Below, piece after piece: positions 1,037-60,556 of a stretch of 64,000 bases of DNA. The translations under genes and the position numbers were made by a program. Where the stretch lies: IMG/VR virus record IMGVR_UViG_3300028558_000791, positions 416,839-480,838 of that record. One strand, given 5' to 3'. The notes beneath the pieces were generated by a model. The model worked only from the letters and a program-made list of their open reading frames with translations, made no database searches and was not told the origin of the DNA. How positions within the stretch are numbered: position 1 is the first letter of the stretch; each line of letters begins with the position of its first letter.

Positions 1037-1939
1037 TTACTTCTTGACCGATTTGTTGTTGTTGCTGTCCAAAAAACTTGCAATCGTGTCACGGTGTACA
1101 AAGAATCCAACCTCTGGAGCACGAGTAATACGAACCGCAATGCCAATTAACTCGCCATAATCATTGAAACATCCACCACCAGAGTTACCATAGAAAATTG
1201 GTGACTGTACCTGCATGTATGGTCCCCTAGCATCATCCTTGCCAGCACTCAAACGCTTGTAATGATCAGCATCACGGTAAGCAGCAACCTGACCACCCAT
1301 GTACGTCCAGTATAATCCAGTCTGATGACCAACTACATTAACATGCTCGCCAAGTGCCGGTGTCTCACTAGCAATACGAGCTACCTTGTGTGCCGGTACT
1401 AAATCTCCCTGCGCCTCAAGTAACGCTAAATCATGCGCTTCATCAAATGCAACCGCCTTGCTCAAATGCCAGCCAGATGGCTCGGCCGCAACTCCCATAA
1501 CTTCCTTCTCTACAATGTAGTGAATCTTAAGACCCTTCTTCTCTACCTTGTCAGCCTCTTGTGGTCCTCCACTGCCACCACCAAATAGCTTCTGAAGCAT
1601 CTCTTGAAGACTCTTAGGCTCATCATTGCTGCCTTCCTTGCGCTTGTCAAGCCTCTCCTGCTGCCATTCAAGCTCTCCCTCAATACAATGATTAGCTGTG
1701 AGAATGTGAGTCTCATCAACCCAAACTCCAGTACAAAATGGACGATAACCAGTAGTAATAGTGGTCTCCTTATCGTCGTGGTATCCCATCAATGCAACAG
1801 TGGCTCCACCTTCCTGTATGATTAAATCGTGTGCGCTCAGCTTCGACTTAGGTATTACCCCAGAGTCTTTTAAACTAGCACAGCCGCCTAAAGTAACACT
1901 CAAAATAACTAATAGTAGCAAACTGAAATAACGTTTCAT
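1037..1939 (-). CDS. Trypsin-like (S1) serine protease, predicted lipoprotein
   Basis: LTANHC (His), HDLALL (Asp), GNSGG (Ser); lipobox-like LGGC. Confidence 0.85.
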   Translation of the reverse strand: MKRYFSLLLLVILSVTLGGCASLKDSGVIPKSKLSAHDLIIQEGGATVALMGYHDDKETTITTGYRPFCTGVWVDETHILTANHCIEGELEWQQERLDKRKEGSNDEPKSLQEMLQKLFGGGSGGPQEADKVEKKGLKIHYIVEKEVMGVAAEPSGWHLSKAVAFDEAHDLALLEAQGDLVPAHKVARIASETPALGEHVNVVGHQTGLYWTYMGGQVAAYRDADHYKRLSAGKDDARGPYMQVQSPIFYGNSGGGCFNDYGELIGIAVRITRAPEVGFFVHRDTIASFLDSNNNKSVKK

Positions 1940-24226: not shown

Positions 24227-25048
24227 ATGAGCAAGTTTCTGTTGACGGACTGGGAAATCAACGGGTACGACGACTCTGACTTCATGTGTTCGTACTACGA
24301 TGATGTGACCAACACCATCGGGTTCAACTGCTACGGCAGCACTCGGTATCCTTCCGCCTCTGTCATTGGCATTGGTGGAGGCATCAGTTCAGTTGTGGTG
24401 GATGGAGACAATCTCCTGATGCCCGACGCTATGGTAGTGGAGAAAGCACGACTGGTTCTGGAGGAAAGTATCTTTCAGAAGCTGGTGTCCTCTGACAAGC
24501 GGCTGGTAGATACTCCAGATGTGGAAGACCTCAAGGAAGGTCTGGCCATTCGGTTGACTGCCAAGGCAAAGATGCAGATTCGTGAGTCGGCTCCCTGTCA
24601 GAAATGCAGTGGTTCTGGCAAGTGGATCAATCCTCGCAATGCCAACGACAAGCGAGACTGCTTTGCATGCAATGGCAGTGGTCAGCATGTTGGGGCTAAG
24701 CGCAAGAACGAGCAAGGCAAGCAGGTATATGAAGAGTTACCTGCTGGCCTCTCGGGTAAGGTTGTGGACTGGACCAGTTTTGGTCAGTTCTATGCCGGCG
24801 GGTACAACAAACCCAACCGAGAGAACACGACGGTTCAATTCCGTTTGGCTGATGGCAAGGTTGTTCGAGCCAGTCTATCCAAGATGAGATTGGATCGTGA
24901 CTATCGCCCGGCTGAGGAGTTGAGAGATAGGGCTCGTGACCTTTCATTCAACTACAGCTTCAGTGCATTGTATCCCAGGTTCGCTTGGGACACTCACAAC
25001 TTCGCTGTTCAAGTAGCTAAGGCTGCCGCTCCCATTCACGCCGCATAG
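24227..25048 (+). CDS. Hypothetical protein with DnaJ-like Zn finger
   Basis: NGYDDSDF; CQKCSGSG...CFACNGSG. Confidence 0.8.
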   Translation: MSKFLLTDWEINGYDDSDFMCSYYDDVTNTIGFNCYGSTRYPSASVIGIGGGISSVVVDGDNLLMPDAMVVEKARLVLEESIFQKLVSSDKRLVDTPDVEDLKEGLAIRLTAKAKMQIRESAPCQKCSGSGKWINPRNANDKRDCFACNGSGQHVGAKRKNEQGKQVYEELPAGLSGKVVDWTSFGQFYAGGYNKPNRENTTVQFRLADGKVVRASLSKMRLDRDYRPAEELRDRARDLSFNYSFSALYPRFAWDTHNFAVQVAKAAAPIHAA

Positions 25049-32852: not shown

Positions 32853-33116
32853 ATGGAACACATCGAAGACCCTCCTCCTTGTCGTCATTGCGGGCGCTGT
32901 GTTTTCTGTGGTCCTCCATGCTGTGATGGTATGGCTGCTGACCAAGAAGCTTGGTACAAATCTCCAGAGTATCTGGAATTAGTTCGCAAGCAAAAGGAAG
33001 AGAGCATACGTGCCAAGGCAGAAAGAAAAGCTGCCAAGAAATTGAGGCGAGCCAAGCAGCTTGCCGAACGAAACGGCCCTCCCATTCACGGCAACCCGCA
33101 ACCACAAGAAAAATGA
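32853..33116 (+). CDS. Cys-rich basic hypothetical protein
   Basis: CRHCGRCVFCGPPCC; GAGG RBS. Confidence 0.6.
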   Translation: MEHIEDPPPCRHCGRCVFCGPPCCDGMAADQEAWYKSPEYLELVRKQKEESIRAKAERKAAKKLRRAKQLAERNGPPIHGNPQPQEK

Positions 33117-33709
33117 ACAAGCCCTACATCCAACTGAATCAGGACTTTCCCGGAATCGTCAGCCTCTTCATGTACGACAAGGAGACGGCCAAGAACATCT
33201 CTGCATTGGCAGAGACTATCATGCGGCGGGCTCGGCCTCAGGGTCTTTCGGTTGGTCAACGAGAGCTGATTGCTTCGTTCGTCAGCAAGGTGAACGAGTG
33301 CAACTTCTGCTGCGACTCCCATTCAGCGTGCACCGCCGAGTATCTCGGGCAGGACGTGGTGGATGAGGTGATTCGCAATCAGAACGCGGAGTATCTTCCG
33401 CCCCGGATGCAGTCACTTCTCAGTGTGGCGGCATGCGTAGCACTGTTGGATCGTGAGCAGCTCTCGAAACAGATCGCCATTGCCAAAGAGCAAGGGGCGA
33501 ATGACGAGGAGATTCACGATACGGTCCTGGTGGCTGCCATGTTCTGCATGTGCAATCGCTACGTGGATGGTCTCGGCACTACGTTCAAGGCTGGAGAGCC
33601 TGAAGAGGGTGGTCGTGGTCTTGCCAAGTATGGGTACAACTTCGGTATCCGACGCTTCTTCGGTGAAGTCTTTCCGAAGATGTGGTCCAAGTTTTGGAAT
33701 AGACCATGA
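33113..33709 (+). CDS. AhpD/carboxymuconolactone decarboxylase-family protein
   Basis: RELIASFVSKVNECNFCCDSH. Confidence 0.85.
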   Translation: MNKPYIQLNQDFPGIVSLFMYDKETAKNISALAETIMRRARPQGLSVGQRELIASFVSKVNECNFCCDSHSACTAEYLGQDVVDEVIRNQNAEYLPPRMQSLLSVAACVALLDREQLSKQIAIAKEQGANDEEIHDTVLVAAMFCMCNRYVDGLGTTFKAGEPEEGGRGLAKYGYNFGIRRFFGEVFPKMWSKFWNRP

Positions 33710-34966: not shown

Positions 34967-35683
34967 ATGGAACGCGAAAACATCATCGACAAAATCCGCA
35001 AACTCCGTGCTCTGGCAGACAACGCTGCCGCCACTGTTGACGAAGCTGCGGCTGCTGCAAGGGCAGCCGAGCTTCTCATTCAGAAACATGCCTTGCAAGA
35101 GGCTGAGTTGGGAGCTGTCTCTCAGGAAGTCTTGGAAAGTATCATCGATGATGATACTCCTCTGACCGACTGGGCCAAACGACAGAAGGTTTGGCAGAAC
35201 GTTCTTCTCCATGCAATGGCAGAGAACTACAACTGCTCCAACGTGATGAAGCGTGTTGGTGGTATCTCTAACATCTACACCATCGGCCGAGCATCTGACA
35301 TCGCTGTTCTGCGATATCAGTTCGCTTACTTCGTGGTGGAGTTGACTCGTCTGGCTCATCTCCTCGCTCCGTCTGACCTCAAGCGAGGCAGTGGTAAGAC
35401 GTGGCACAACTCGTTCTATCATGGAGCGACGGATGCCATCATCGCTTCCATGAAGTCGGCCAAGAAGGAAGTCATCAAGGACGCATCCTCAACTGCATTG
35501 GTGTTCATCAGCGAACACATGCGCAAGGTGGAGGAACTCAAAGCTCAGAAGTATCCTTGGAGTCGAACCAGTCACTCTGCACGACGGTTGGATCCCGAGG
35601 CATACGAGATGGGCAAGATGGCTGGTGCAGGGCTTCAAGCAAAGCCCGCCTTGGCTCCAGGTGTTCGCGGTCTTCTCAAGTAA
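34967..35683 (+). CDS. DUF2786-domain phage protein
   Basis: IIDKIRKLRALA...EA.AA...A..L..KH. Confidence 0.8.
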   Translation: MERENIIDKIRKLRALADNAAATVDEAAAAARAAELLIQKHALQEAELGAVSQEVLESIIDDDTPLTDWAKRQKVWQNVLLHAMAENYNCSNVMKRVGGISNIYTIGRASDIAVLRYQFAYFVVELTRLAHLLAPSDLKRGSGKTWHNSFYHGATDAIIASMKSAKKEVIKDASSTALVFISEHMRKVEELKAQKYPWSRTSHSARRLDPEAYEMGKMAGAGLQAKPALAPGVRGLLK

Positions 35684-35694
35684 AGGAAAAGAAA

Positions 35695-36243
35695 ATGGCT
35701 AAGCAATTCATGGTTCCTCTTTATCACCTGGAACTGGTGCGTGAGAGGGACATTCCCTACCGCTCTGTCGTCAAGAAAGAGGCGGCGGTGGAAGTGTTTC
35801 ATGAGATGCTAGACTCGGCTCATGTCGAGAAGTTGGCAATGATTCACTGCAACTCCGGTCTCGATATGATTGGAGCAGAGATTGTGGCCATGGGCAGCCT
35901 GGAAATGGTTGGCACCACCATGAGCGAACTGTTCAAGGGAGCACTGCGTAGCAATGCTGCTGCGGTGTACCTGTCTCACAATCATGTGGATGGTCGGGTG
36001 AAGGCTTCTCTGCCCGATTACAAGTTCACGTTGCGTGCTCTCCAGGCTGCTCAGATTCTGGAGATTCCGCTCATCGACCACATCGTGGTTGGTCCTGGGG
36101 CACACTACTCCATCATCGAGCACCAATACGAATTGGAGAATGACTTGCTTCGTTGGGAGCAGAAGCAGCGTCTCAAGATGCTGAAGGGAATGATTCCCGT
36201 GCCCCATGGAACCAAGGGTCTCAAGGGTTTGTTCGGAGGATAA
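35695..36243 (+). CDS. radC: RadC-like JAB-domain protein
   Basis: E...ELFKGAL..NAAAVYLSHNHVDG...S..D...IPLIDHIVVG. Confidence 0.85.
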   Translation: MAKQFMVPLYHLELVRERDIPYRSVVKKEAAVEVFHEMLDSAHVEKLAMIHCNSGLDMIGAEIVAMGSLEMVGTTMSELFKGALRSNAAAVYLSHNHVDGRVKASLPDYKFTLRALQAAQILEIPLIDHIVVGPGAHYSIIEHQYELENDLLRWEQKQRLKMLKGMIPVPHGTKGLKGLFGG

Positions 36244-42236: not shown

Positions 42237-42692
42237 ATGGCTGACGACAAGAAGACTGAGAAGACGGACAAGAAGACCAAGGCGGAGAAGGCTGCGGAGG
42301 CAGAGCAGTCTGCACGTGGTGACCGTGGTGAGTTGGGGACGGCTACGCCCAAGCTGACCATCACGCAGCTCTGGCATGCGGCGCACTTCACTCGCAAGGA
42401 TGCCAACGACAAGGGCAACTTCCGAAAGCGCCTCTACGTCCCCAACCACGGCGCCCCATCGCTGAAGAAGTTCGCCCGTGAGCTTCTCAAGGCTGGTGAC
42501 CCGGTGGCCAAGGCTTGGTTCGCCAACAAGGTTGGAGCCAAGAACGAGAAGCGCAACGACAAGAACACGGCCCGCATCTCGGCGGAGAAGATTGCCAGCA
42601 AGGCGGCTCGTCGTAAGAAGAGCCAAGGCAAGCAGGGCAAGGCTGCAACCGACACGGCAGCTCCGGCTGCTGCGGCGGCTGGAAAGAAGTAA
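42237..42692 (+). CDS. Highly basic Lys/Ala-rich protein (possible nucleic-acid binder)
   Basis: AAGGA/AGGA RBS, extreme codon bias, K/A-rich tail. Confidence 0.75.
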   Translation: MADDKKTEKTDKKTKAEKAAEAEQSARGDRGELGTATPKLTITQLWHAAHFTRKDANDKGNFRKRLYVPNHGAPSLKKFARELLKAGDPVAKAWFANKVGAKNEKRNDKNTARISAEKIASKAARRKKSQGKQGKAATDTAAPAAAAAGKK

Positions 42693-42695
42693 ACC

Positions 42696-42917
42696 ATGGA
42701 AACCATCGCATCTCTCATTCGAGAGTTTCCATTCGGTAGCTTCCTGATCATCACTGCATTCATTGCTGGTGGTGTCAAAGTAGCTACGGCCTTTGTCAAT
42801 CGCAACAAGCCCGAGTGCAACTGCGAACGGGACTGTGAGTGCGAGGATGATGATGACGACTGTGATGATGACGAGGGCGAAGGTCCGGCCATCATGGGCG
42901 GTTCGGAAGAGGATTGA
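42696..42917 (+). CDS. Small membrane protein with acidic Cys-containing tail
   Basis: TM helix followed by CNCERDCEC and poly-D. Confidence 0.6.
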   Translation: METIASLIREFPFGSFLIITAFIAGGVKVATAFVNRNKPECNCERDCECEDDDDDCDDDEGEGPAIMGGSEED

Positions 42918-43176: not shown

Positions 43177-43476
43177 ATGAGTAACCACGGTCCGATCTTC
43201 ATGGCAGGCGATGCAGTTTACTACAATGGTGAGAAGCACAAGCAAGCTCTTTCTAACAAGGAAGGTAAGCCTTTCAAGGGTTGGATTCATGCGGCGGTAC
43301 AGAACGAACCGGGTGCATTCGTGGTCTGGTTTCCGGATACGAAGGAATCCGACTCGTACGTTCTCAGTGCGCAGAACCTGACCAAGGCTCGGCCCATCGT
43401 GGAGAAGGTTACGAAGACCCATGATGGTCCAGTGGTGGAGCACATGCCGAGCCGCCGCAAGCACTCGGAAGACTGA
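43177..43476 (+). CDS. SH3-like hypothetical protein
   Basis: AAGGA RBS; GDAVYY...GWI. Confidence 0.65.
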   Translation: MSNHGPIFMAGDAVYYNGEKHKQALSNKEGKPFKGWIHAAVQNEPGAFVVWFPDTKESDSYVLSAQNLTKARPIVEKVTKTHDGPVVEHMPSRRKHSED

Positions 43477-43699
43477 GGAGAGACGTCATGATTGGGTGGA
43501 TGATGGGTTGGTTATGGTGGTTTGCTTGGAGGCTAGTAGTATCAATCGCCTGCTTGTGGACCATCCAAAACGTCATCCACCAAGAAGGCTATTACATAGA
43601 GTTTCGTATTCTAGTAATAGCCGCTGTCTGTGCAGTTGTAGGCATTCGCGTTTGGATGCCTTCGGCTAAAGAAAATACCTCACATAAAGATTGACACCA

Positions 43700-45199
43700 A
43701 TGTCCCGCTACGAAGAAGAAGAGAACCGCATTCTCCGCAAAGCAATCGATGATGCCAAGAAGAAGTTGGCAGAGCAGGACGCTGTCCTCAAGCAACTTCT
43801 TGCCCTACCAACTGTTCAGGGTGTCGCCATCAACGTTCGAGGGACGAGAGTCCTGGTGTCAGCGCCCCAGGGTCTGGTAGAGGTAGAGTTTCCGTCCAAA
43901 CCTGTGGATGGAAAATACCTGAGCGTTCGTGCGGGTTCTCCCGTTCGTATGATCACACATCCCGAAACTGGACTTCTCTCCATCATCGATGTTCTCTCAT
44001 CTGATGATTGGTTTGGTGACCTGGTGGTTGCCAGCAAAGAAGCCAAGAACGGTGAAGTCGAAGTGGAATGGAACGGTAACACCCGTGTCATTCGCATCGG
44101 CGCAGGGATCAAGGTTCCAGAAGCAGGCGACCGCCTGATGATGGATGACAAGGTCACGGTCGCTCTCAAGAACTTCGGTCCCGATGAGTCCAAGTTCTCT
44201 TTTCAGGGAACCTCCACGGTTTCTTGGGATGACATCGGTGGCTTGGCATTGGCCAAGCAGACTCTGGTGGAAAGCATCGAGCTTCCCCACCAGTACCCGG
44301 ATCTGTTCAAGCTCTACAACAAGAAGCAAGTCAAGGGCGTTCTGCTCTATGGCCCTCCGGGATGTGGTAAGACCATGCTTGGCAAGGCTACGGCTTCCTC
44401 TCTTGCGAAGAGCCACGGCAAGCAGGCGACCAACACCGGATTCATCTATGTCAAGGGGCCGGAGCTTCTCGATAAGTTCGTTGGAAACTCGGAAGCTCAC
44501 ATCCGAGGCTTGTTTGCACGAGCACGCAAGCATCAGAAGAAGTTCGGCTATCCGGCTGTCCTCTTCATCGATGAGGGTGATGCCGTTCTCGGCAAGCGTG
44601 ATGGTCGACCTGGCATGGGCATCGAGGCAACTACGGTTCCTCAATTCCTGGCAGAGATGGATGGCCTGGATGAAACCGGACCCATCGTTCTCATCGCCAC
44701 CAATCGTCCTGACTCGCTCGACTCGGCCGTCACTCGTGATGGTCGTGTGGACCAGAAGGTTCAGGTCACTCGGCCTGATAAGTCTGGGGCCAAGGATATC
44801 TTCAAGCTCTACTTGAGCAAGATTCCTTTGGCTAAGGGCCTGGACGTGAATGAGGCGGCAGAGTTTTCTGCGGCACTCATGTACGACAACAAGTTCGAGT
44901 TCTACAATCTGTTCAACTCGAATGGAACCAAGGTCAACTTCACGTTGGCCGGGCTGGCAAACGGTGCAATGATTGCTGGTGTGGTCGATAAGGCCACCAT
45001 GCAGGCAATGCAGCGTGACATCGCAGCAGCTCAGCGCAAGCTGCACAACGATCGTGGTGTGACTCTGGAAGACATTCGTCTCTCCATCGAATCCACCTAT
45101 CACCAGAACAAGCATCTCAATCATGAGGTCGAGGTGAAAGAGTTCGTCGAGAACAATCAACTGTCGGTCGACAGAATCATCAAGGCTCAGGCGGCCTGA
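43700..45199 (+). CDS. ARC/Mpa-like proteasomal-type AAA+ ATPase
   Basis: N-terminal coiled coil, beta-rich inter-domain, GPPGCGKT, VKGPELL.KFVG pore loop, LFIDEGD, ATNRPD.LD.AVTRDGR.D, GAMI; no C-terminal HbYX. Confidence 0.85.
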   Translation: MSRYEEEENRILRKAIDDAKKKLAEQDAVLKQLLALPTVQGVAINVRGTRVLVSAPQGLVEVEFPSKPVDGKYLSVRAGSPVRMITHPETGLLSIIDVLSSDDWFGDLVVASKEAKNGEVEVEWNGNTRVIRIGAGIKVPEAGDRLMMDDKVTVALKNFGPDESKFSFQGTSTVSWDDIGGLALAKQTLVESIELPHQYPDLFKLYNKKQVKGVLLYGPPGCGKTMLGKATASSLAKSHGKQATNTGFIYVKGPELLDKFVGNSEAHIRGLFARARKHQKKFGYPAVLFIDEGDAVLGKRDGRPGMGIEATTVPQFLAEMDGLDETGPIVLIATNRPDSLDSAVTRDGRVDQKVQVTRPDKSGAKDIFKLYLSKIPLAKGLDVNEAAEFSAALMYDNKFEFYNLFNSNGTKVNFTLAGLANGAMIAGVVDKATMQAMQRDIAAAQRKLHNDRGVTLEDIRLSIESTYHQNKHLNHEVEVKEFVENNQLSVDRIIKAQAA

Positions 45200-45210
45200 A
45201 AGGAAACGTC

Positions 45211-45462
45211 ATGTTCGAGTTCATCAAGAAGAAGAAGGTCATCGGTGGTGGTGGTGGTAACGGTCCCGAGAAGGGCAACAGTGACGAGGAAGCCATCGAA
45301 GCCCCGGAAGTCGATGACACTCTGAGTGACCTGGACGCAGCTCTTGCTGCGGCCGATAAGGTCAAGGATCAGAGGGCCAAGGACGAGAAGCGAGCGCAAG
45401 AGCGTGAGGCTGCACTGGAGCGCGAGCGCCGTAGCTACGGTAGCCGTTGCGGTTGCGGCTGA
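45211..45462 (+). CDS. Pup-like small protein ending in CGCG
   Basis: KK..GGGGG, acidic linker, VDDTLSDLDAAL helix; AAGGA RBS directly after the ATPase. Confidence 0.6.
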   Translation: MFEFIKKKKVIGGGGGNGPEKGNSDEEAIEAPEVDDTLSDLDAALAAADKVKDQRAKDEKRAQEREAALERERRSYGSRCGCG

Positions 45463-45463
45463 G

Positions 45464-45772
45464 ATGAGCCTGCTTTCGTTTCTCTTCCTTGGTTTGTGCT
45501 GCGGCACAATCTCCTACACAATTACAAAGGGGTCCATCTTCGGACCCCTGCGTGTGTGGATGATTGAGCGCACCTACTGGCTAGGGAAGTTGATGCAGTG
45601 TCCTTACTGCATGTCTCATTGGGTTGCGGCTCTGGCTATGCTGGCGCTTCAACCCAAGATGATCGGTGGCAATGTTGTTGCCGATTATGTTGTAACCGGA
45701 TTCGCATTGACTGGACTGTCTGCGCTGACTGCTGGTTGCATCTTCAAACTCTTCTACGTCAAAGAAGACTGA
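45464..45772 (+). CDS. DUF1360-like membrane protein
   Basis: IFGPLR...LGKLMQCPYCMSHW. Confidence 0.75.
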   Translation: MSLLSFLFLGLCCGTISYTITKGSIFGPLRVWMIERTYWLGKLMQCPYCMSHWVAALAMLALQPKMIGGNVVADYVVTGFALTGLSALTAGCIFKLFYVKED

Positions 45773-49840: not shown

Positions 49841-50269
49841 ATGAAGACCCCTGTTACCATAGAAGTTTCTGTAGAGATTGTGGATTGGGATCCCGCTTTT
49901 GTAAAAGAAGGTGCAGTCTCTTTCGCCTCTGAAAAGGAAGCTGCCTTCTTTTGGTTCCGTCGGTCTGACTTCAATAGTCACTGCACCATCTCACAAAACC
50001 CACACACTAAACGATGGGTAATGGTGACAGAGATTTATGTTCCCAAATCCAAAGCAGAAGAGGTTGCTCTTTTTTGGAAAGAGGGTTGGGATACGCAGAG
50101 GGATGCGTATGGCCAAGCATGCTGGGACGAATACTACCGTGGTGTTCGTGATGCAGAACTGAATACAGTTTTTGATCGAGAGGGCTTTGGTGAGAAGATC
50201 ATTCAACGCCTGGCCAAAGCGATGCCTAAGTGGATGTTCGCAAATAAACAGTTGAAGGAAAACAAATGA
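49841..50269 (+). CDS. Hypothetical protein
   Basis: ATGA coupling to the RNA ligase gene. Confidence 0.6.
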   Translation: MKTPVTIEVSVEIVDWDPAFVKEGAVSFASEKEAAFFWFRRSDFNSHCTISQNPHTKRWVMVTEIYVPKSKAEEVALFWKEGWDTQRDAYGQACWDEYYRGVRDAELNTVFDREGFGEKIIQRLAKAMPKWMFANKQLKENK

Positions 50270-51360
50270 AGTTCATGGCATGGCCGGAGATTGAATCGTT
50301 CCACAATATTAGGAAGTTCATCCGTGTTGATCCGGGTGAGTGGTGGCACAAGAAAGAACTTCTTGCCGGCACGAGTGTTGTGTCCTACAAGGCCAAGGTC
50401 AAGCTGCACGGAACCAATGCGGCTGTACGAATTGATTCTAGTGGTAACGTCACGGCTCAAAGCCGAACCAACATCATCACTCCCGAGAATGACAACGCAG
50501 GCTTCGCCCGCTGGGTGAAGGCCAATGAGAATGAGTGGAAGAAGACGGCAGCCGTTCCTACTAAGGATAATCCTGCCGACCACTATCTCAATGTGGTTTA
50601 CTACGGTGAGTGGATTGGCCCTGGCATTCAAAAGAATGTTGCCGTATCTGAGATTCCCAAGAAATGTTTCGCCGTCTTCGCCATGAAAATTCTTGGCAAG
50701 GATGAAGAGGAAGTTCTTTTCGAGGTTGAACCTAAACGTATCGAGATGTATCTCGGCAAGAGTGGAATCAAGTTTGCTTTTTCAGAAGAAGCCAACCTTC
50801 CTGATGTCTATGTTCTTCCCTGGTATGAGCAGTCAATCGACATCGACTGGAAGCAGAACGATGAAGAACTGAGCAAGACCATTGCACCCATCAACGATTG
50901 GGTAATGGCTATCGAAGCCAATGACCCGTGGGTTGAGAAGACCTTTGGCGTCAAGGGAACTGGTGAAGGTTTAGTCTTCTATCCAGCTTCCGTTGCACAT
51001 AAGAACAGCTTCGAGCACTTCACCAACCTTTGCTTCAAGGCTAAAGGAGAGAAGCATAAGAACATTGCTACTGCCAAGCCCGTCCAGGTAAGTGCAGAAG
51101 CGGCTGCCAGCATCGATGCCTTCGTTGCCATGGTCCTCACTGAAGCTCGACTGGAGCAAGGGGCGACTAAGGTTTCTCCAGGTGGTGCACTTACCTATGA
51201 CATGAAGAATACGGGTAAGTTCGTCACATGGGTAAGTGCGGATGTGGAAAAAGAAACTCAGGACGAGTTGGCTGCAAGCAGTCTGACTTGGAAGGAAGTT
51301 CAGAAACCCATCAGTGACAAGGCCCGCTCCTGGTATCTCACTAAGGCTAAGGGATTTTGA
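50266..51360 (+). CDS. RNA ligase, Rnl2-type
   Basis: Motif I KLHGTN, YGEWIG.GIQK, FAVF, GEGLVF, FKAK. Confidence 0.85.
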   Translation: MKFMAWPEIESFHNIRKFIRVDPGEWWHKKELLAGTSVVSYKAKVKLHGTNAAVRIDSSGNVTAQSRTNIITPENDNAGFARWVKANENEWKKTAAVPTKDNPADHYLNVVYYGEWIGPGIQKNVAVSEIPKKCFAVFAMKILGKDEEEVLFEVEPKRIEMYLGKSGIKFAFSEEANLPDVYVLPWYEQSIDIDWKQNDEELSKTIAPINDWVMAIEANDPWVEKTFGVKGTGEGLVFYPASVAHKNSFEHFTNLCFKAKGEKHKNIATAKPVQVSAEAAASIDAFVAMVLTEARLEQGATKVSPGGALTYDMKNTGKFVTWVSADVEKETQDELAASSLTWKEVQKPISDKARSWYLTKAKGF

Positions 51361-54920: not shown

Positions 54921-55844
54921 ATGATTCTCGTAGGAAGTCGAGCGCTAGCTCTGAGGAAACCGGCAGCTCTCATGAGGAAACCGCTTGACTTCGATTGGGT
55001 TTGTACCTTTTCTGAGTATGAAGCTTGGATGGAGAAGAACTCATCTAAAGTCAAGCCGACCAAAGTGTACTCGGAGACTGGCCACAACTTCCACAAGATG
55101 ATTGTGGAAGGAACTACCAACTGCGAATTCGAGATCATTCAAGAGGGGCAAAGTTCGGAAATTCTCCAGAAATTTGTGGAAGGTAATTCCGAAAGTTTGG
55201 AGACGCCCTTCGGTTGGGTTCCGACTTTCGACATGTTGTTCACCATCAAGCAGTCTCATCGCTACTTGAGAAACAGCCCGCACTTCTGGAAGACATTGGT
55301 CGATTGGCATACCATGAAGCACATGGGCGCGGTGGTTCGTCCAGAGTACAAAGACTTCCTCAAGATGCGAGAGAAGGAAACCTATTGGTACAAGCATCCT
55401 AAGCTCAATACCACTAAGGAAAACTTCTTCAAGGATGATATGATCGACTACGTGTGGGACCATGATGATATCCATAAGTCGGTGGCTATCTATGACCGCC
55501 CTGCTTACACCTATTACCTGAAGGATGGAGCCCAGGTAGATTGTGATAAGGATAAGTTCTTTGCAATCTCTCAAGAGCTTCGTCTAGCCGGTGTAGTGGA
55601 AGAGGCCGCTGTCTTGGCAGTCGAGCGTAGTTTGGTTCCACACCCGAACGTATGGACTCCCGAGTACGCTTGGAAGTTTGCTCTAGCTAAGGTCTGCTCC
55701 AGCATTACGTCTGGATGGTTTCGTCAGTTCGCATACGAGAATGCGCCCAAGGTTCTCAAGCTTTACCCAACAGGGTATTGGGAGAAGTTCCAAACGGATT
55801 GCGCAAGCGGTCTGGTCAAACCTTTCACCGGAAGCAAATACTGA
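54921..55844 (+). CDS. Conserved large-phage protein with nucleotidyltransferase-like N-terminus
   Basis: LVGSRAL...DFDW (GS-x-DxD); K.SH; HD.IH. Confidence 0.65.
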   Translation: MILVGSRALALRKPAALMRKPLDFDWVCTFSEYEAWMEKNSSKVKPTKVYSETGHNFHKMIVEGTTNCEFEIIQEGQSSEILQKFVEGNSESLETPFGWVPTFDMLFTIKQSHRYLRNSPHFWKTLVDWHTMKHMGAVVRPEYKDFLKMREKETYWYKHPKLNTTKENFFKDDMIDYVWDHDDIHKSVAIYDRPAYTYYLKDGAQVDCDKDKFFAISQELRLAGVVEEAAVLAVERSLVPHPNVWTPEYAWKFALAKVCSSITSGWFRQFAYENAPKVLKLYPTGYWEKFQTDCASGLVKPFTGSKY

Positions 55845-60481: not shown

Positions 60482-60556
60482 GGCCCCATCTTCTAGCGGC
60501 TAGGATGCGAGACCTTCACTCTCGTCACACGGGTTCGAGTCCCGTTGGGGTCACCA
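60482..60556 (+). tRNA. tRNA-Glu (anticodon UUC) with encoded CCA
   Basis: GGCCCCA/TGGGGTC acceptor, CGAGA-CCTTCAC-TCTCG, ACGGG-TTCGAGT-CCCGT, ACCA; C at position 33. Confidence 0.85.

What the first reader, a model, noticed from the sequence alone, without database searches (positions are those of the whole stretch)
43700..45462. Phage ARC/Mpa-type unfoldase followed by a Pup-like protein ending in CGCG
Seen: the AAA+ ATPase has an N-terminal coiled coil and ARC-like pore-loop and SRH motifs. Eleven nt after its stop is an 83-aa low-complexity protein: KKVIGGGGG...VDDTLSDLDAAL...YGSRCGCG. Established: actinobacterial Pup has KRGGGGG, then a TDDLLDEIDDVL helix that binds the Mpa coiled coil, and ends GGQ/GGE; Mpa docks on the 20S proteasome via a C-terminal HbYX (GQYL). 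Here the ATPase ends KAQAA, the tag ends in Cys-Gly, and no PafA/Dop or 20S gene is recognisable in the window. Inference: a possibly undescribed tag-and-unfold system with Cys-based conjugation or metal binding, or a decoy of a host system.
Basis: partly seen in the sequence, partly recalled or inferred. Interest (0 to 1): 0.85.

Follow-up and report, generated by a model that had tools for sequence, protein, structure and literature searches.

The report
Phage unfoldase with ligase-free Pup-like partner
A huge soil phage carries a three-gene set found in many large phages (an unfolding motor related to the bacterial Mpa/ARC proteasome ATPase, a small Pup-like protein ending in a two-cysteine motif, and a small membrane protein with its own cysteine pair) that resembles the bacterial Pup tagging system but has no tagging enzyme and no proteasome.

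Summary
The ORF at 43700-45199 encodes a 499-aa ATPase. It is collinear with ARC/Mpa over its whole length: best NCBIfam model is pup_AAA, and the 30 best Foldseek matches are all M. tuberculosis Mpa. Eleven nt downstream, 45211-45462 encodes a conserved 83-aa protein ending CGCG.

At 45464-45772 is a DUF1360 membrane protein with an invariant CxxC and a nearly invariant His. I found the triad (ATPase, small Cys-motif protein, DUF1360) in about 29 of 55 phage-type loci, in Lak-like megaphages and in prophage-like MAG contigs.

The small family resembles Pup in its basic N-terminus and its Mpa-binding helix (hhalign 84-88%, P about 1e-5, stronger than Pup against UBact). It lacks Pup's C-terminal half and GG[QE]. 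Its invariant feature is CxC, which is not always terminal.

No Dop/PafA or 20S gene was found in the window or in any phage locus. Phage ATPases also lack the GQYL docking end (1 of 54, against 49 of 73 cellular).

My best reading is a ligase-free Pup-like adaptor that links the unfoldase to the membrane protein, probably through a shared Cys/His metal site. The binding steps are inferred, not shown. Covalent Cys conjugation and a host decoy both look unlikely.

The parts
43700..45199 (+). ARC/Mpa-family AAA+ unfoldase, 499 aa (alternative TTG start at 43691), ending KAQAA with no GQYL/HbYX motif
   Evidence: TIGR03689 matches residues 7-483 against profile positions 15-495 of 512, at 273.8 bits. 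AF2 pLDDT is 87.2. The 30 best Foldseek PDB matches are all Mtb Mpa, full length. Tree. C-terminal ends compared.
43706..43798 (+). N-terminal coiled-coil helix (residues 3-33), the counterpart of the Pup-binding coiled coil of Mpa
   Evidence: DSSP on the AF2 model. An HMM of this helix finds only ATPases (46) and DUF1360 C-terminal tails (4) among 15,222 ORFs.
43811..44182 (+). Two beta-rich (OB-like) domains, residues 38-161
   Evidence: AF2 strands E38-63 and E81-161, aligned with Mpa over the full length. Pfam OB models alone gave no hit.
44351..44752 (+). AAA+ catalytic motifs: Walker A 44351-44374, pore loop KFVG 44474-44485, Walker B 44561-44575, sensor-1 44696-44707, SRH arginines 44732-44752
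   Evidence: Motif positions. PF00004 matched at E 7.6e-32.
45200..45210 (+). 11-nt spacer AAGGAAACGTC with a Shine-Dalgarno-like AAGGA
45211..45462 (+). Pup-like small protein, 83 aa. Regions: basic N-terminus MFEFIKKKK (45211-45237); G/N-rich stretch (45238-45282); acidic segment plus helix motif EAPEVDDTLSDLDAALAAADK (45283-45360); charged helix (45361-45435); YGSRCGCG end (45436-45459)
   Evidence: Family alignments A1-A3. 77 cluster representatives. hhalign against Pup gives probability 84-88% over residues 29-47.
45448..45456 (+). Invariant CxC motif (C80-G-C82)
   Evidence: These are the only invariant columns across 73 family members. The residues that follow vary.
45464..45772 (+). 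DUF1360 membrane protein, 102 aa, with three long hydrophobic helices. It starts 2 nt after the small ORF's stop.
   Evidence: PF07098 at 28.4 bits, above the 21-bit cut-off. AF2 pLDDT is 95. It is the conserved neighbour in about 29 of 55 phage-type loci and in Lak-like loci.
45599..45619 (+). CPYCMSH motif (C46, C49, H52) at the start of the second long helix
   Evidence: C46 and C49 are invariant and H52 is nearly invariant in 37 partners. Helix 47-62 in the model.
43177..43476 (+). Upstream 99-aa beta-rich protein, syntenic only in the closest clade; membership in the module is uncertain
   Evidence: Conserved position and sequence in L003-L006. No family hit.
43488..43694 (+). 68-aa hydrophobic small ORF between the 99-aa gene and the ATPase; membership in the module is uncertain
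   Evidence: ORF list. No significant family hit.

Best explanation
This is a phage-borne, ligase-free and proteasome-free relative of the Pup-ARC system, built from three co-transcribed genes.

(1) The ATPase is a hexameric ARC/Mpa-type unfoldase with an N-terminal coiled coil, two OB-like domains and one AAA+ ring. This is shown by sequence, fold and tree.

[quoted passage not shown] It lacks Pup's ligase-binding second helix and its GG[QE] end, and has an invariant CxC instead. The similarity is shown; the binding is inferred.

(3) The DUF1360 protein is a small membrane protein whose invariant CxxC and nearly invariant His sit at the start of its second long helix. I place that motif at the cytoplasmic membrane surface; this is my inference from the K/R-rich preceding loop, with no topology prediction run.

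I infer that the small protein's CxC completes a shared metal site with that Cys2His site, or less likely forms a thiol link. A known analogy is the zinc clasp that joins the CxC tail of CD4 to the CxxC of Lck (from my own knowledge). The small protein would then be a fixed adaptor that couples the unfoldase to the membrane protein. The result could be either anchoring of the motor at the membrane, or presentation of the membrane protein (or its cargo) for pulling and extraction.

In some lineages the membrane protein also carries a copy of the ATPase's own coiled-coil helix on its cytoplasmic tail, which argues independently for direct contact. The biological output in infection is not known.
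For: ATPase identity. TIGR03689 aligns over the full length and is the best family. All 30 best Foldseek PDB matches are Mpa, with 485-511 columns and TM 0.66-0.79. The phage ATPases form one clade with cellular ARC against FtsH/Cdc48-like outgroups at 100% support.

Not a proteasome activator. A penultimate aromatic residue occurs in 1 of 54 phage-type ends against 49 of 73 cellular ends. Dop/PafA and 20S HMMs hit 65 and 47 of 75 cellular loci, but no window segment and no viral locus. IMG/VR scans for both found nothing.

Pup likeness.
- Pup is the top NCBIfam family by number of family members matched (6 of 73). Pfam Pup is matched by 5 of 73.
- Three Pup chains appear among the 8 PDB matches of the family profile, in register.
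- The family HMM hits real Pup ORFs at E 9e-6 and 6e-4 among 15,222 ORFs, and one persists on iteration.
- hhalign against a 44-sequence Pup alignment gives probability 84-88% and P 3e-6 to 7e-6. The score is 31.7, against a column-shuffle mean of 8.8, sd 1.8 and maximum 15.2.
- By the same measure Pup against UBact reaches only 5% and P 0.008.

Synteny. The small Cys-motif ORF lies directly after the ATPase in about 35 of 55 distinct phage-type loci, and DUF1360 follows in about 29. The arrangement also occurs in Lak-like loci (L012, L065, L070, L074, L091). These are my counts. Reverse look-ups from three divergent small proteins all returned an ATPase upstream and a DUF1360-like gene downstream. 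None of 75 cellular ARC loci has the pair.

Cysteine pairing. C80 and C82 are the only invariant residues of the small family. C46 and C49 are the only invariant residues of its partner, and H52 is nearly invariant.

Tail mimicry. An HMM of the ATPase coiled-coil helix finds, apart from ATPases, only DUF1360 tails among 15,222 ORFs. The best are L015 at 2e-8, L009 at 1e-7 and L014 at 5e-7.

Gene packing. The gaps between the three genes are 11 nt and 1 nt.
Against: The Pup similarity is confined to about 19 profile columns plus a loosely similar N-terminus. A reversed Pup profile still scores 23.0, so part of the signal is generic acidic amphipathic-helix character, and convergence cannot be excluded. 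The window's own protein does not hit the Pfam or NCBIfam Pup models.

The metal-clasp idea rests only on co-conserved cysteines and adjacency. CPYC is also a classic redox motif.

A subtype of the small protein, ending IC.CG.P.C.IGPF, occurs without DUF1360. About 20 of 55 phage-type ATPases have neither partner nearby. The ATPase can therefore work without the membrane protein.

DUF1360 proteins also occur on their own in other phages and bacteria (Pfam family).

Only 64 kb of the 481-kb genome could be read in full. For the rest, the absence of a ligase rests on a pattern-limited scan.
Confidence: 0.45

Rival explanations
1. The membrane protein is the substrate, not the anchor. The small protein would be a pre-attached degron-like handle. 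When the ATPase engages its N-terminus it pulls on the DUF1360 protein, extracting or dismantling it, for example as a timing switch for a membrane event late in infection.
For: The same evidence as the main model: synteny, paired invariant cysteines and a Pup-like N-terminus and helix. In the Pup system the tag's N-terminus is threaded and the attached protein is unfolded (review PMC8223512). The N-terminus M[FW][ED]Q.KKK is more conserved than a mere linker would need to be.
Against: A non-covalent metal site may not withstand pulling. There is no link to lysis genes in the neighbourhoods examined. The coiled-coil-like tails on some DUF1360 proteins look more like stable docking than like a substrate.
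Confidence: 0.2
2. One reading: the small protein is a covalent tag conjugated through its cysteines or C-terminus to many targets, which the ATPase then unfolds.
For: Overall Pup-like layout and adjacency to an ARC-type ATPase. Two invariant cysteines near the end.
Against: No Dop/PafA-like or other ligase-like gene is conserved next to the pair, and none was found in the window or in 80 viral loci. The residues after CxC range from none to 11 or more, and in Lak-like phages the motif is internal. This does not fit chemistry at a defined C-terminal carboxylate. The constant neighbour with an invariant CxxC and a nearly invariant His points to one fixed partner.
Confidence: 0.08
3. A decoy or inhibitor of a host Pup-proteasome or UBact system. 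The small protein would occupy the host Mpa/ARC coiled coil, or the phage ATPase would hijack host pupylated proteins.
For: The helix motif resembles the Mpa-binding helix of Pup. The source is a rhizosphere sample, where Actinobacteria are common (the commonness is my own knowledge).
Against: The partner ATPase is always phage-encoded and adjacent. The module occurs in AT-rich Lak-like megaphages and on contigs binned with Saccharibacteria and Gammaproteobacteria. It is therefore not tied to Pup-bearing hosts. A decoy would need neither the invariant CxC nor the membrane partner.
Confidence: 0.05
4. The Pup likeness is convergent or compositional. The small protein would be an unrelated Cys-motif partner of DUF1360 (for example a metal or redox cofactor carrier) that merely shares an operon with an ARC-like chaperone.
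For: The reversed Pup profile still scores 23.0 against 31.7. The significant alignment is only 19 columns. The window protein itself has no Pup hit in Pfam or NCBIfam.
Against: Column shuffles reach at most 15.2. The family HMM picks real Pup out of 15,222 ORFs. Pup recurs in three independent library scans. The type-B subfamily keeps the ATPase adjacency without DUF1360, so the primary link of the small protein is to the ATPase.
Confidence: 0.15

Closest known systems
Mpa/ARC (proteasome-associated AAA+ ATPase of Actinobacteria, Nitrospirota and others; TIGR03689)
   Same: Same domain order and fold over the full length: coiled-coil helix, two OB-like domains, a single AAA+ module and a C-terminal domain. 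All catalytic motifs are intact. It shares a clade with cellular ARC against FtsH/Cdc48-like sequences.
   Different: About 27% identity to Mpa. The score is below the NCBIfam cut-off (273.8 against 504.75). It lies outside the monophyletic cellular ARC clade. It has no GQYL/HbYX end and a shorter coiled coil (about 30 residues). It is never next to dop, pup, prcBA or pafA, and is instead next to a CxC protein and DUF1360.
Pup (prokaryotic ubiquitin-like protein; PF05639, TIGR03687)
   Same: Small size (55-110 aa) with a disordered basic N-terminus (M..Q.KK plus a G/P-rich stretch). It is followed by an acidic helix motif.D..L..[IL]D..L, aligned with Pup's TDDLLDEIDDVL, which forms the helix that joins the Mpa coiled coil. 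It is encoded beside an ARC-type ATPase.
   Different: It lacks Pup's C-terminal half (NAEEFV..YVQKGG[QE]), the part that binds PafA/Dop and is ligated. It ends instead in a variable charged helix and an invariant CxC. No ligase or depupylase is present. It falls below the Pfam and NCBIfam thresholds.
UBact (Pup-like tag of Nitrospirota, Verrucomicrobiota and others)
   Same: Similar layout, including a conserved Pro before the helix (.P[DN]...LL). A weak hhalign match lies in the same register, at probability 12-22% and P about 1e-3.
   Different: UBact ends RQR[ST]G[EQ] and sits in Dop/proteasome loci. The phage family has neither feature.
Proteasome-free pupylation with ARC, as in Corynebacterium (Kuberl et al. 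2016, cited in PMC8223512)
   Same: An ARC-type unfoldase acting without a 20S partner, on proteins marked by a Pup-type helix.
   Different: That system still uses PafA/Dop and an isopeptide bond. Here no ligase is found, and the partner appears to be fixed.
CD4/CD8-Lck zinc clasp (my own knowledge, analogy only)
   Same: A CxC motif on one short tail and a CxxC on the partner, proposed to share one metal ion at the cytoplasmic face of the membrane.
   Different: No homology. Here the CxxC side is the membrane protein and carries an extra His. Metal binding is untested.
DUF1360 (PF07098)
   Same: The window protein passes the Pfam threshold (28.4 against 21 bits) over the CxxC-containing core.
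   Different: The family has no known function. Its pairing with an ARC-like ATPase and a CxC protein, and the coiled-coil-like tails, are not described in the papers I could search.

Membership tests
ARC/Mpa (TIGR03689 pup_AAA) | Full-length architecture: N-terminal coiled coil, double OB domain, single AAA+ module, C-terminal domain | tested here: met
   The HMM alignment covers residues 7-483 against 15-495 of 512. AF2 secondary structure. Full-length Foldseek alignments to Mpa with TM 0.66-0.79.
ARC/Mpa (TIGR03689 pup_AAA) | Score above the curated equivalog cut-off (504.75 bits) | tested here: not met
   273.8 bits.
ARC/Mpa (TIGR03689 pup_AAA) | C-terminal proteasome-docking motif (GQYL; penultimate aromatic residue) | tested here: not met
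   The protein ends KAQAA. The motif occurs in 1 of 54 phage-type ends against 49 of 73 cellular ends. Motif definition from PMC8223512.
ARC/Mpa (TIGR03689 pup_AAA) | Genomic association with dop/pafA, pup and prcBA | tested here: not met
   Dop/PafA and 20S HMMs gave no hit in the window or in any viral locus; 65 and 47 of 75 cellular loci were hit. IMG/VR scans were negative.
ARC/Mpa (TIGR03689 pup_AAA) | Placement inside the cellular ARC clade | tested here: not met
   Cellular ARC is monophyletic (99%). The window sequence lies in a separate phage clade within the wider ARC-like clade (100%) (quick search, no PAN outgroup).
Pup (PF05639 / TIGR03687) | C-terminal GG[QE] used for ligation | tested here: not met
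   The protein ends CGCG. None of 73 family members ends GG[QE].
Pup (PF05639 / TIGR03687) | Sequence match to the family model above threshold | tested here: not met
   The window protein has no hit at E<=1. Five or six of 73 relatives give sub-threshold hits, best E 0.002-0.003.
Pup (PF05639 / TIGR03687) | Mpa-binding helix motif and disordered N-terminus | tested here: met
   hhalign probability 84-88%, P 3e-6 to 7e-6 over residues 29-47. Shuffle control. The family HMM hits real Pup. This is similarity only; binding was not tested.
Pup (PF05639 / TIGR03687) | Covalent attachment to target lysines by PafA | not testable with these tools
   No ligase gene was found. Conjugates would need a blot or mass spectrometry.
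UBact | C-terminal R[ST]G[EQ] and a Dop/proteasome neighbourhood | tested here: not met
   UBact sequences were recovered from cellular loci. hhalign is weak, at probability 12-22%. Neither the ending nor the neighbourhood is present.
DUF1360 (PF07098), for the downstream gene | Pfam gathering score | tested here: met
   28.4 bits against a 21-bit cut-off. The CxxC is invariant and the His nearly invariant in 37 partners.
Known anti-phage defence systems (PADLOC) | Match of the three proteins to a defence-system model | tested here: not met
   Only generic AAA matches (IetA, TRIP13) for the ATPase, and none for the other proteins.

The most novel reading that the evidence does not exclude
Large phages carry a third branch of the Pup/UBact family that works without any ligase. 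The tag-like protein is joined to one dedicated membrane partner through a shared Cys/His metal site, and it recruits an ARC-type unfoldase to that partner. Because the phage ATPases surround the single cellular ARC clade in the tree, this module could be the sister or even the source of the Pup-ARC recognition pair. That would show how a binding adaptor preceded, or degenerated from, a conjugated tag.
Probability: 0.3. Interest if true: 0.9.

Novelty: new variant of a known kind. Interest (0 to 1): 0.78.

Why it matters
Pup-ARC recognition has been regarded as a speciality of Actinobacteria and a few other phyla, always coupled to a ligase and usually to a proteasome. Here the same motor and a Pup-like recognition helix recur in dozens of lineages of large phages, including Lak-like megaphages. 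In these phages the ligase-binding end is replaced by a cysteine motif and a dedicated membrane partner is present.

If the proposed coupling holds, it would be a new way to aim an unfoldase: a metal-clasped adaptor instead of a covalent tag. It would assign a first function to DUF1360. It would also make the origin of Pup testable. In addition, it marks a conserved but uncharacterised activity of huge phages at the host membrane. I found no description of this module in the searchable literature.

Tried and rejected
- Direct family scans of the window's small protein (Pfam, NCBIfam, PHROGs, PADLOC) gave nothing meaningful. tblastn against GenBank phages gave no match. The ESM Atlas gave only unnamed clusters below the useful score.
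- The first PDB profile search with the narrow alignment A2 found nothing. Pup chains appeared only weakly, and only with the broad alignment.
- I suspected that the longer ATPase homologues (580-635 aa) were fusions with the small protein. They carry N-terminal extensions instead.
- The long profile-search hits P0153, P0177 and P0198 are not family members. P0153 is a TPR/FGE-sulfatase protein; P0177 and P0198 were dismissed on length and their many repeated stretches alone.
- Pfam OB-domain models did not hit the isolated N-terminal region. The fold evidence comes from AF2 and Foldseek.
- Brevundimonas phage 'proteasome-associated ATPases' (H1, H2) lack the coiled coil and OB domains and have no partner genes. 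They belong to a separate AAA-only clade.
- The DUF1360 model has no structural relative in Swiss-Prot AFDB.
- Expression: no RNA run holds this DNA. One 5.9-kb contig of a relative (about 87% identical) in a soil metatranscriptome spans the four genes, but DNA carry-over cannot be excluded.
- Promoter and terminator scans gave no clear operon boundaries.
- A prediction of the ATPase-small protein-DUF1360 complex was not possible with the tools.
Full report
**What is in the window.** The window is part of IMG/VR contig IMGVR_UViG_3300028558_000791 (480,838 bp), which comes from a rhizosphere metagenome. Three tightly packed genes lie on the + strand.
- 43700-45199 encodes a 499-aa AAA+ ATPase.
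- After an 11-nt spacer with a Shine-Dalgarno-like AAGGA, 45211-45462 encodes an 83-aa protein.
- Starting 2 nt after that gene's stop, 45464-45772 encodes a 102-aa hydrophobic protein.

**The ATPase.**
- The best NCBIfam model by a wide margin is TIGR03689 (pup_AAA). It aligns from residue 7 to 483 at 273.8 bits. CDC48 reaches 183.9, PAN 171 and FtsH 147, and those three match only the AAA core. The score is below the equivalog cut-off of 504.75.
- An AF2 model (pLDDT 87.2) shows a long N-terminal helix (residues 3-33), two beta domains (38-161), the AAA+ module and a C-terminal domain.
- The 30 best Foldseek matches in the PDB are all M. tuberculosis Mpa chains, aligned over 485-511 columns with TM 0.66-0.79. 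Rpt subunits follow ten orders of magnitude behind.
- The Walker A, Walker B, pore-loop, sensor-1 and arginine-finger motifs are intact.
- I built a tree of 115 sequences with FtsH/Cdc48-like viral ATPases as outgroup. All phage ARC-like sequences and cellular ARC/Mpa form one clade (100% SH-aLRT). Cellular ARC is monophyletic (99%). The window's protein sits in a separate, large phage clade.
- The proteasome-docking end is absent. A penultimate aromatic residue occurs in 49 of 73 cellular ARC ends (mostly GQYL) but in only 1 of 54 phage-type ends (motif as described in PMC8223512).

**The small protein is a real, large family.**
- Twelve close homologues share invariant MFEFIKKK, DLDAAL and the two cysteines.
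- A profile search of 1.84 billion representatives returned 77 clusters, nearly all 54-110 aa.
- The common plan has four parts. First comes a basic N-terminus, M[FW][ED]Q.KKK, followed by a G/P/N-rich stretch. Next is an acidic segment with an almost invariant Pro and the helix motif .P[DE]vD..L..[IL]D.AL. Then comes a K/E/R-rich helix of variable length. The protein ends in a cysteine motif.
- Only the two cysteines are invariant across 73 members.
- The motif is usually CGC, but CWC, CSC, CRC, CTC and CC..CC also occur. It is followed by nothing, by W/F/G, or by tails of up to 11 or more residues. In Lak-like phages it is internal.

**Likeness to Pup.**
- The window's own protein hits no Pup model.
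- When all 73 members are scanned, TIGR03687 is the family matched by the most members (6). Pfam Pup is matched by 5. The best E-values are 0.002-0.003.
- The family profile recovers three different Pup chains among only eight PDB matches, in register.
- I verified a typed M. tuberculosis Pup sequence as identical to 7PX9 chain G. I used it only to collect Pup homologues.
- hhalign of the family against a narrow Pup alignment gives probability 56%.
- I then built a diverse 44-sequence Pup alignment from cellular loci. Against it hhalign gives 84-88% and P 3e-6 to 7e-6. The match covers residues 29-47 (IEAPEVDDTLSDLDAALAA) against Pup's KL..D.DdLLDEIDeVLEe.
- Column shuffles of the Pup profile score 8.8 +/- 1.8 (maximum 15.2) against the real 31.7. 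The reversed profile scores 23.0, so part of the signal is generic to acidic amphipathic helices.
- The family HMM also finds real Pup ORFs at E 9e-6 and 6e-4 among 15,222 ORFs.
- As a yardstick, Pup against UBact reaches only 5% and P 0.008 by the same measure. The UBact sequences were recovered from Verrucomicrobiota, Nitrospirota and other loci. The phage family against UBact reaches 12-22%.
- The matched part of Pup is the segment that forms the helix joining the Mpa coiled coil. The part of Pup that binds PafA/Dop and is ligated (NAEEFV..YVQKGG[QE]) has no counterpart.

**Synteny and the third gene.**
- In eight look-ups from ATPase homologues of 44-69% identity, seven had a small Cys-motif ORF directly downstream followed by a DUF1360-like gene. 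One of the seven (L009) is a prophage-like locus in an NCBI assembly, where the small ORF had not been called.
- A GenBank 462-kb uncultured phage (LR756500.1) has the same triad, with a shorter ATPase.
- Reverse look-ups from three divergent small proteins all returned an AAA ATPase upstream and a DUF1360-like gene downstream.
- I then scanned 80 IMG/VR loci and 80 genome loci with local HMMs. By my count, about 35 of 55 distinct phage-type loci have the small protein and about 29 also have DUF1360. Eight Lak-like loci add to this.
- Two MAG contigs, labelled Saccharibacteria and Gammaproteobacteria, carry the phage-type triad.
- None of 75 canonical cellular ARC loci has it. They carry Dop/PafA (65), 20S subunits (47), and Pup or UBact instead.
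- A second subtype of the small protein ends IC.CG.P.C.IGPF. It joins the family at E 1e-12 to 1e-15 and occurs without DUF1360.

**The DUF1360 partner.**
- It passes the Pfam threshold.
- Its AF2 model is very confident (pLDDT 95). It has three long hydrophobic helices and two short ones between the first and second.
- Across 37 partners the only invariant residues are C46 and C49. H52, T19, R30 and L43 are nearly invariant.
- The CP[YW]C..H motif sits at the start of the second long helix and follows a K/R-rich loop. By the positive-inside rule I place it at the cytoplasmic face; this is my inference, and no topology predictor was run.
- In several lineages the protein has a C-terminal tail that copies the ATPase's N-terminal coiled-coil helix.
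- An HMM of that ATPase helix finds only ATPases (46) and DUF1360 proteins (4) among 15,222 ORFs. The tails of L015, L009 and L014 score E 2e-8 to 5e-7.

**How it most likely works.** Three things are shown:
- an intact ARC/Mpa-type unfoldase without a proteasome-docking end;
- a partner with Pup-like N-terminal and helix segments and an invariant CxC;
- a membrane partner with an invariant CxxC and a nearly invariant His, and sometimes a coiled-coil tail.

The three are co-inherited across deep phage diversity, and no ligase or 20S gene was found in any stretch examined.

The rest is inferred. The helix docks on the ATPase coiled coil as Pup does. The CxC completes a metal site (or a thiol link) with the Cys2His site of the membrane protein. 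The small protein is therefore a fixed adaptor, not a conjugated tag.

Whether the membrane protein is an anchor or the thing being pulled cannot be decided from sequence. I give the anchor/adaptor reading 0.45 and the substrate reading 0.2. Covalent Cys-based tagging (0.08) and a host decoy (0.05) fit the data poorly. A convergent, unrelated small protein remains possible (0.15).

**Limits.**
- No interaction was tested.
- Only 64 kb of the 481-kb genome was read in full. For the rest, the absence of Dop/PafA and 20S rests on pattern-limited IMG/VR scans.
- The tree used a quick search and lacked PAN and Rpt outgroups.
- Evidence of transcription is only suggestive.
- The literature searches cover open-access papers and bioRxiv only. 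They found no description of the module.

**Verdict.** The proposed Cys conjugation and decoy roles are not supported. The module is a new variant of the Pup-ARC kind and is widespread in large phages. Interest is high.

Noticed in passing
window 35401-36243 (+): A 280-aa protein with a RadC-like JAB domain (PF04002, E 1.6e-23). JAB/JAMM domains are deubiquitinase-type metalloproteases, so a link to the Pup-like module is conceivable. It lies 8 kb away and was not seen in the relatives' flanks.
   Followed up: no
window 1037-1939 (-): A trypsin-like serine peptidase (PF13365, E 7.5e-18). It is the only recognisable peptidase among the ten largest ORFs of the window.
   Followed up: no
window 43177-43476 and 43488-43694 (+): A 99-aa beta-rich protein (conserved GD.V.Y.G...VVEF...Y) and a 68-aa hydrophobic ORF lie just upstream of the ATPase. 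The 99-aa gene keeps this position in L003-L006 but not in more distant relatives.
   Followed up: partly
window 42696-42917 (+) and 42237-42692 (+): A 73-aa ORF with a hydrophobic helix followed by a Cys/Asp-rich tail (CNCERDCECEDDDDDCDDDEGEG). Next to it is a 151-aa Lys/Ala-rich low-complexity protein. Neither has a family match.
   Followed up: no
L041, L042, L046, L050, L054, L057, L031 (viral loci), directly after the ATPase: A second subtype of the small protein ends in IC.CG.P.C.IGP[FM]. It joins the family at E 1e-12 to 1e-15 but has no DUF1360 neighbour. L031 has both subtypes plus DUF1360.
   Followed up: partly
L023 d231, L040 d35, L032 d210 (nt after the ATPase end): An extra small protein with a C..GC.C..C.....C.GH motif is inserted between the ATPase and the CxC protein in one phage clade.
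   Followed up: no
L007:3429-4970: A second AAA ATPase (513 aa, PF00004) lies immediately upstream of the ARC-like ATPase in a 144-kb contig, next to an aspartyl/asparaginyl-type tRNA synthetase fragment and other auxiliary genes.
   Followed up: no
L009 (NCBI GCA_964512925.1, contig CAZEKH010000002.1): The triad sits in a prophage-like island with an S24 repressor, a serine recombinase, AbiEii and an SMC-like ATPase. The 56-aa small ORF (L009:7006-7176) was not called by the annotation, and the ATPase is 664 aa with an extended N-terminal coiled coil.
   Followed up: partly
window 43189-45624, run X5 (soil metatranscriptome): One 5,915-nt contig of a relative (about 87% identical, depth 38.6) covers the upstream gene, the ATPase, the small gene and DUF1360. 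This is compatible with co-transcription but does not prove it.
   Followed up: partly
window 50266-51360, 54921-55844, 32951-33709, 24227-25048, 60482-60556: Other recognisable genes: an RNA ligase (PF09414), a DUF7277/DUF7275 protein, a CMD-family protein, a protein with a DnaJ-type CXXCXGXG zinc-finger motif, and a tRNA-Glu(TTC). The two largest ORFs (715 and 603 aa) have no Pfam match.
   Followed up: no
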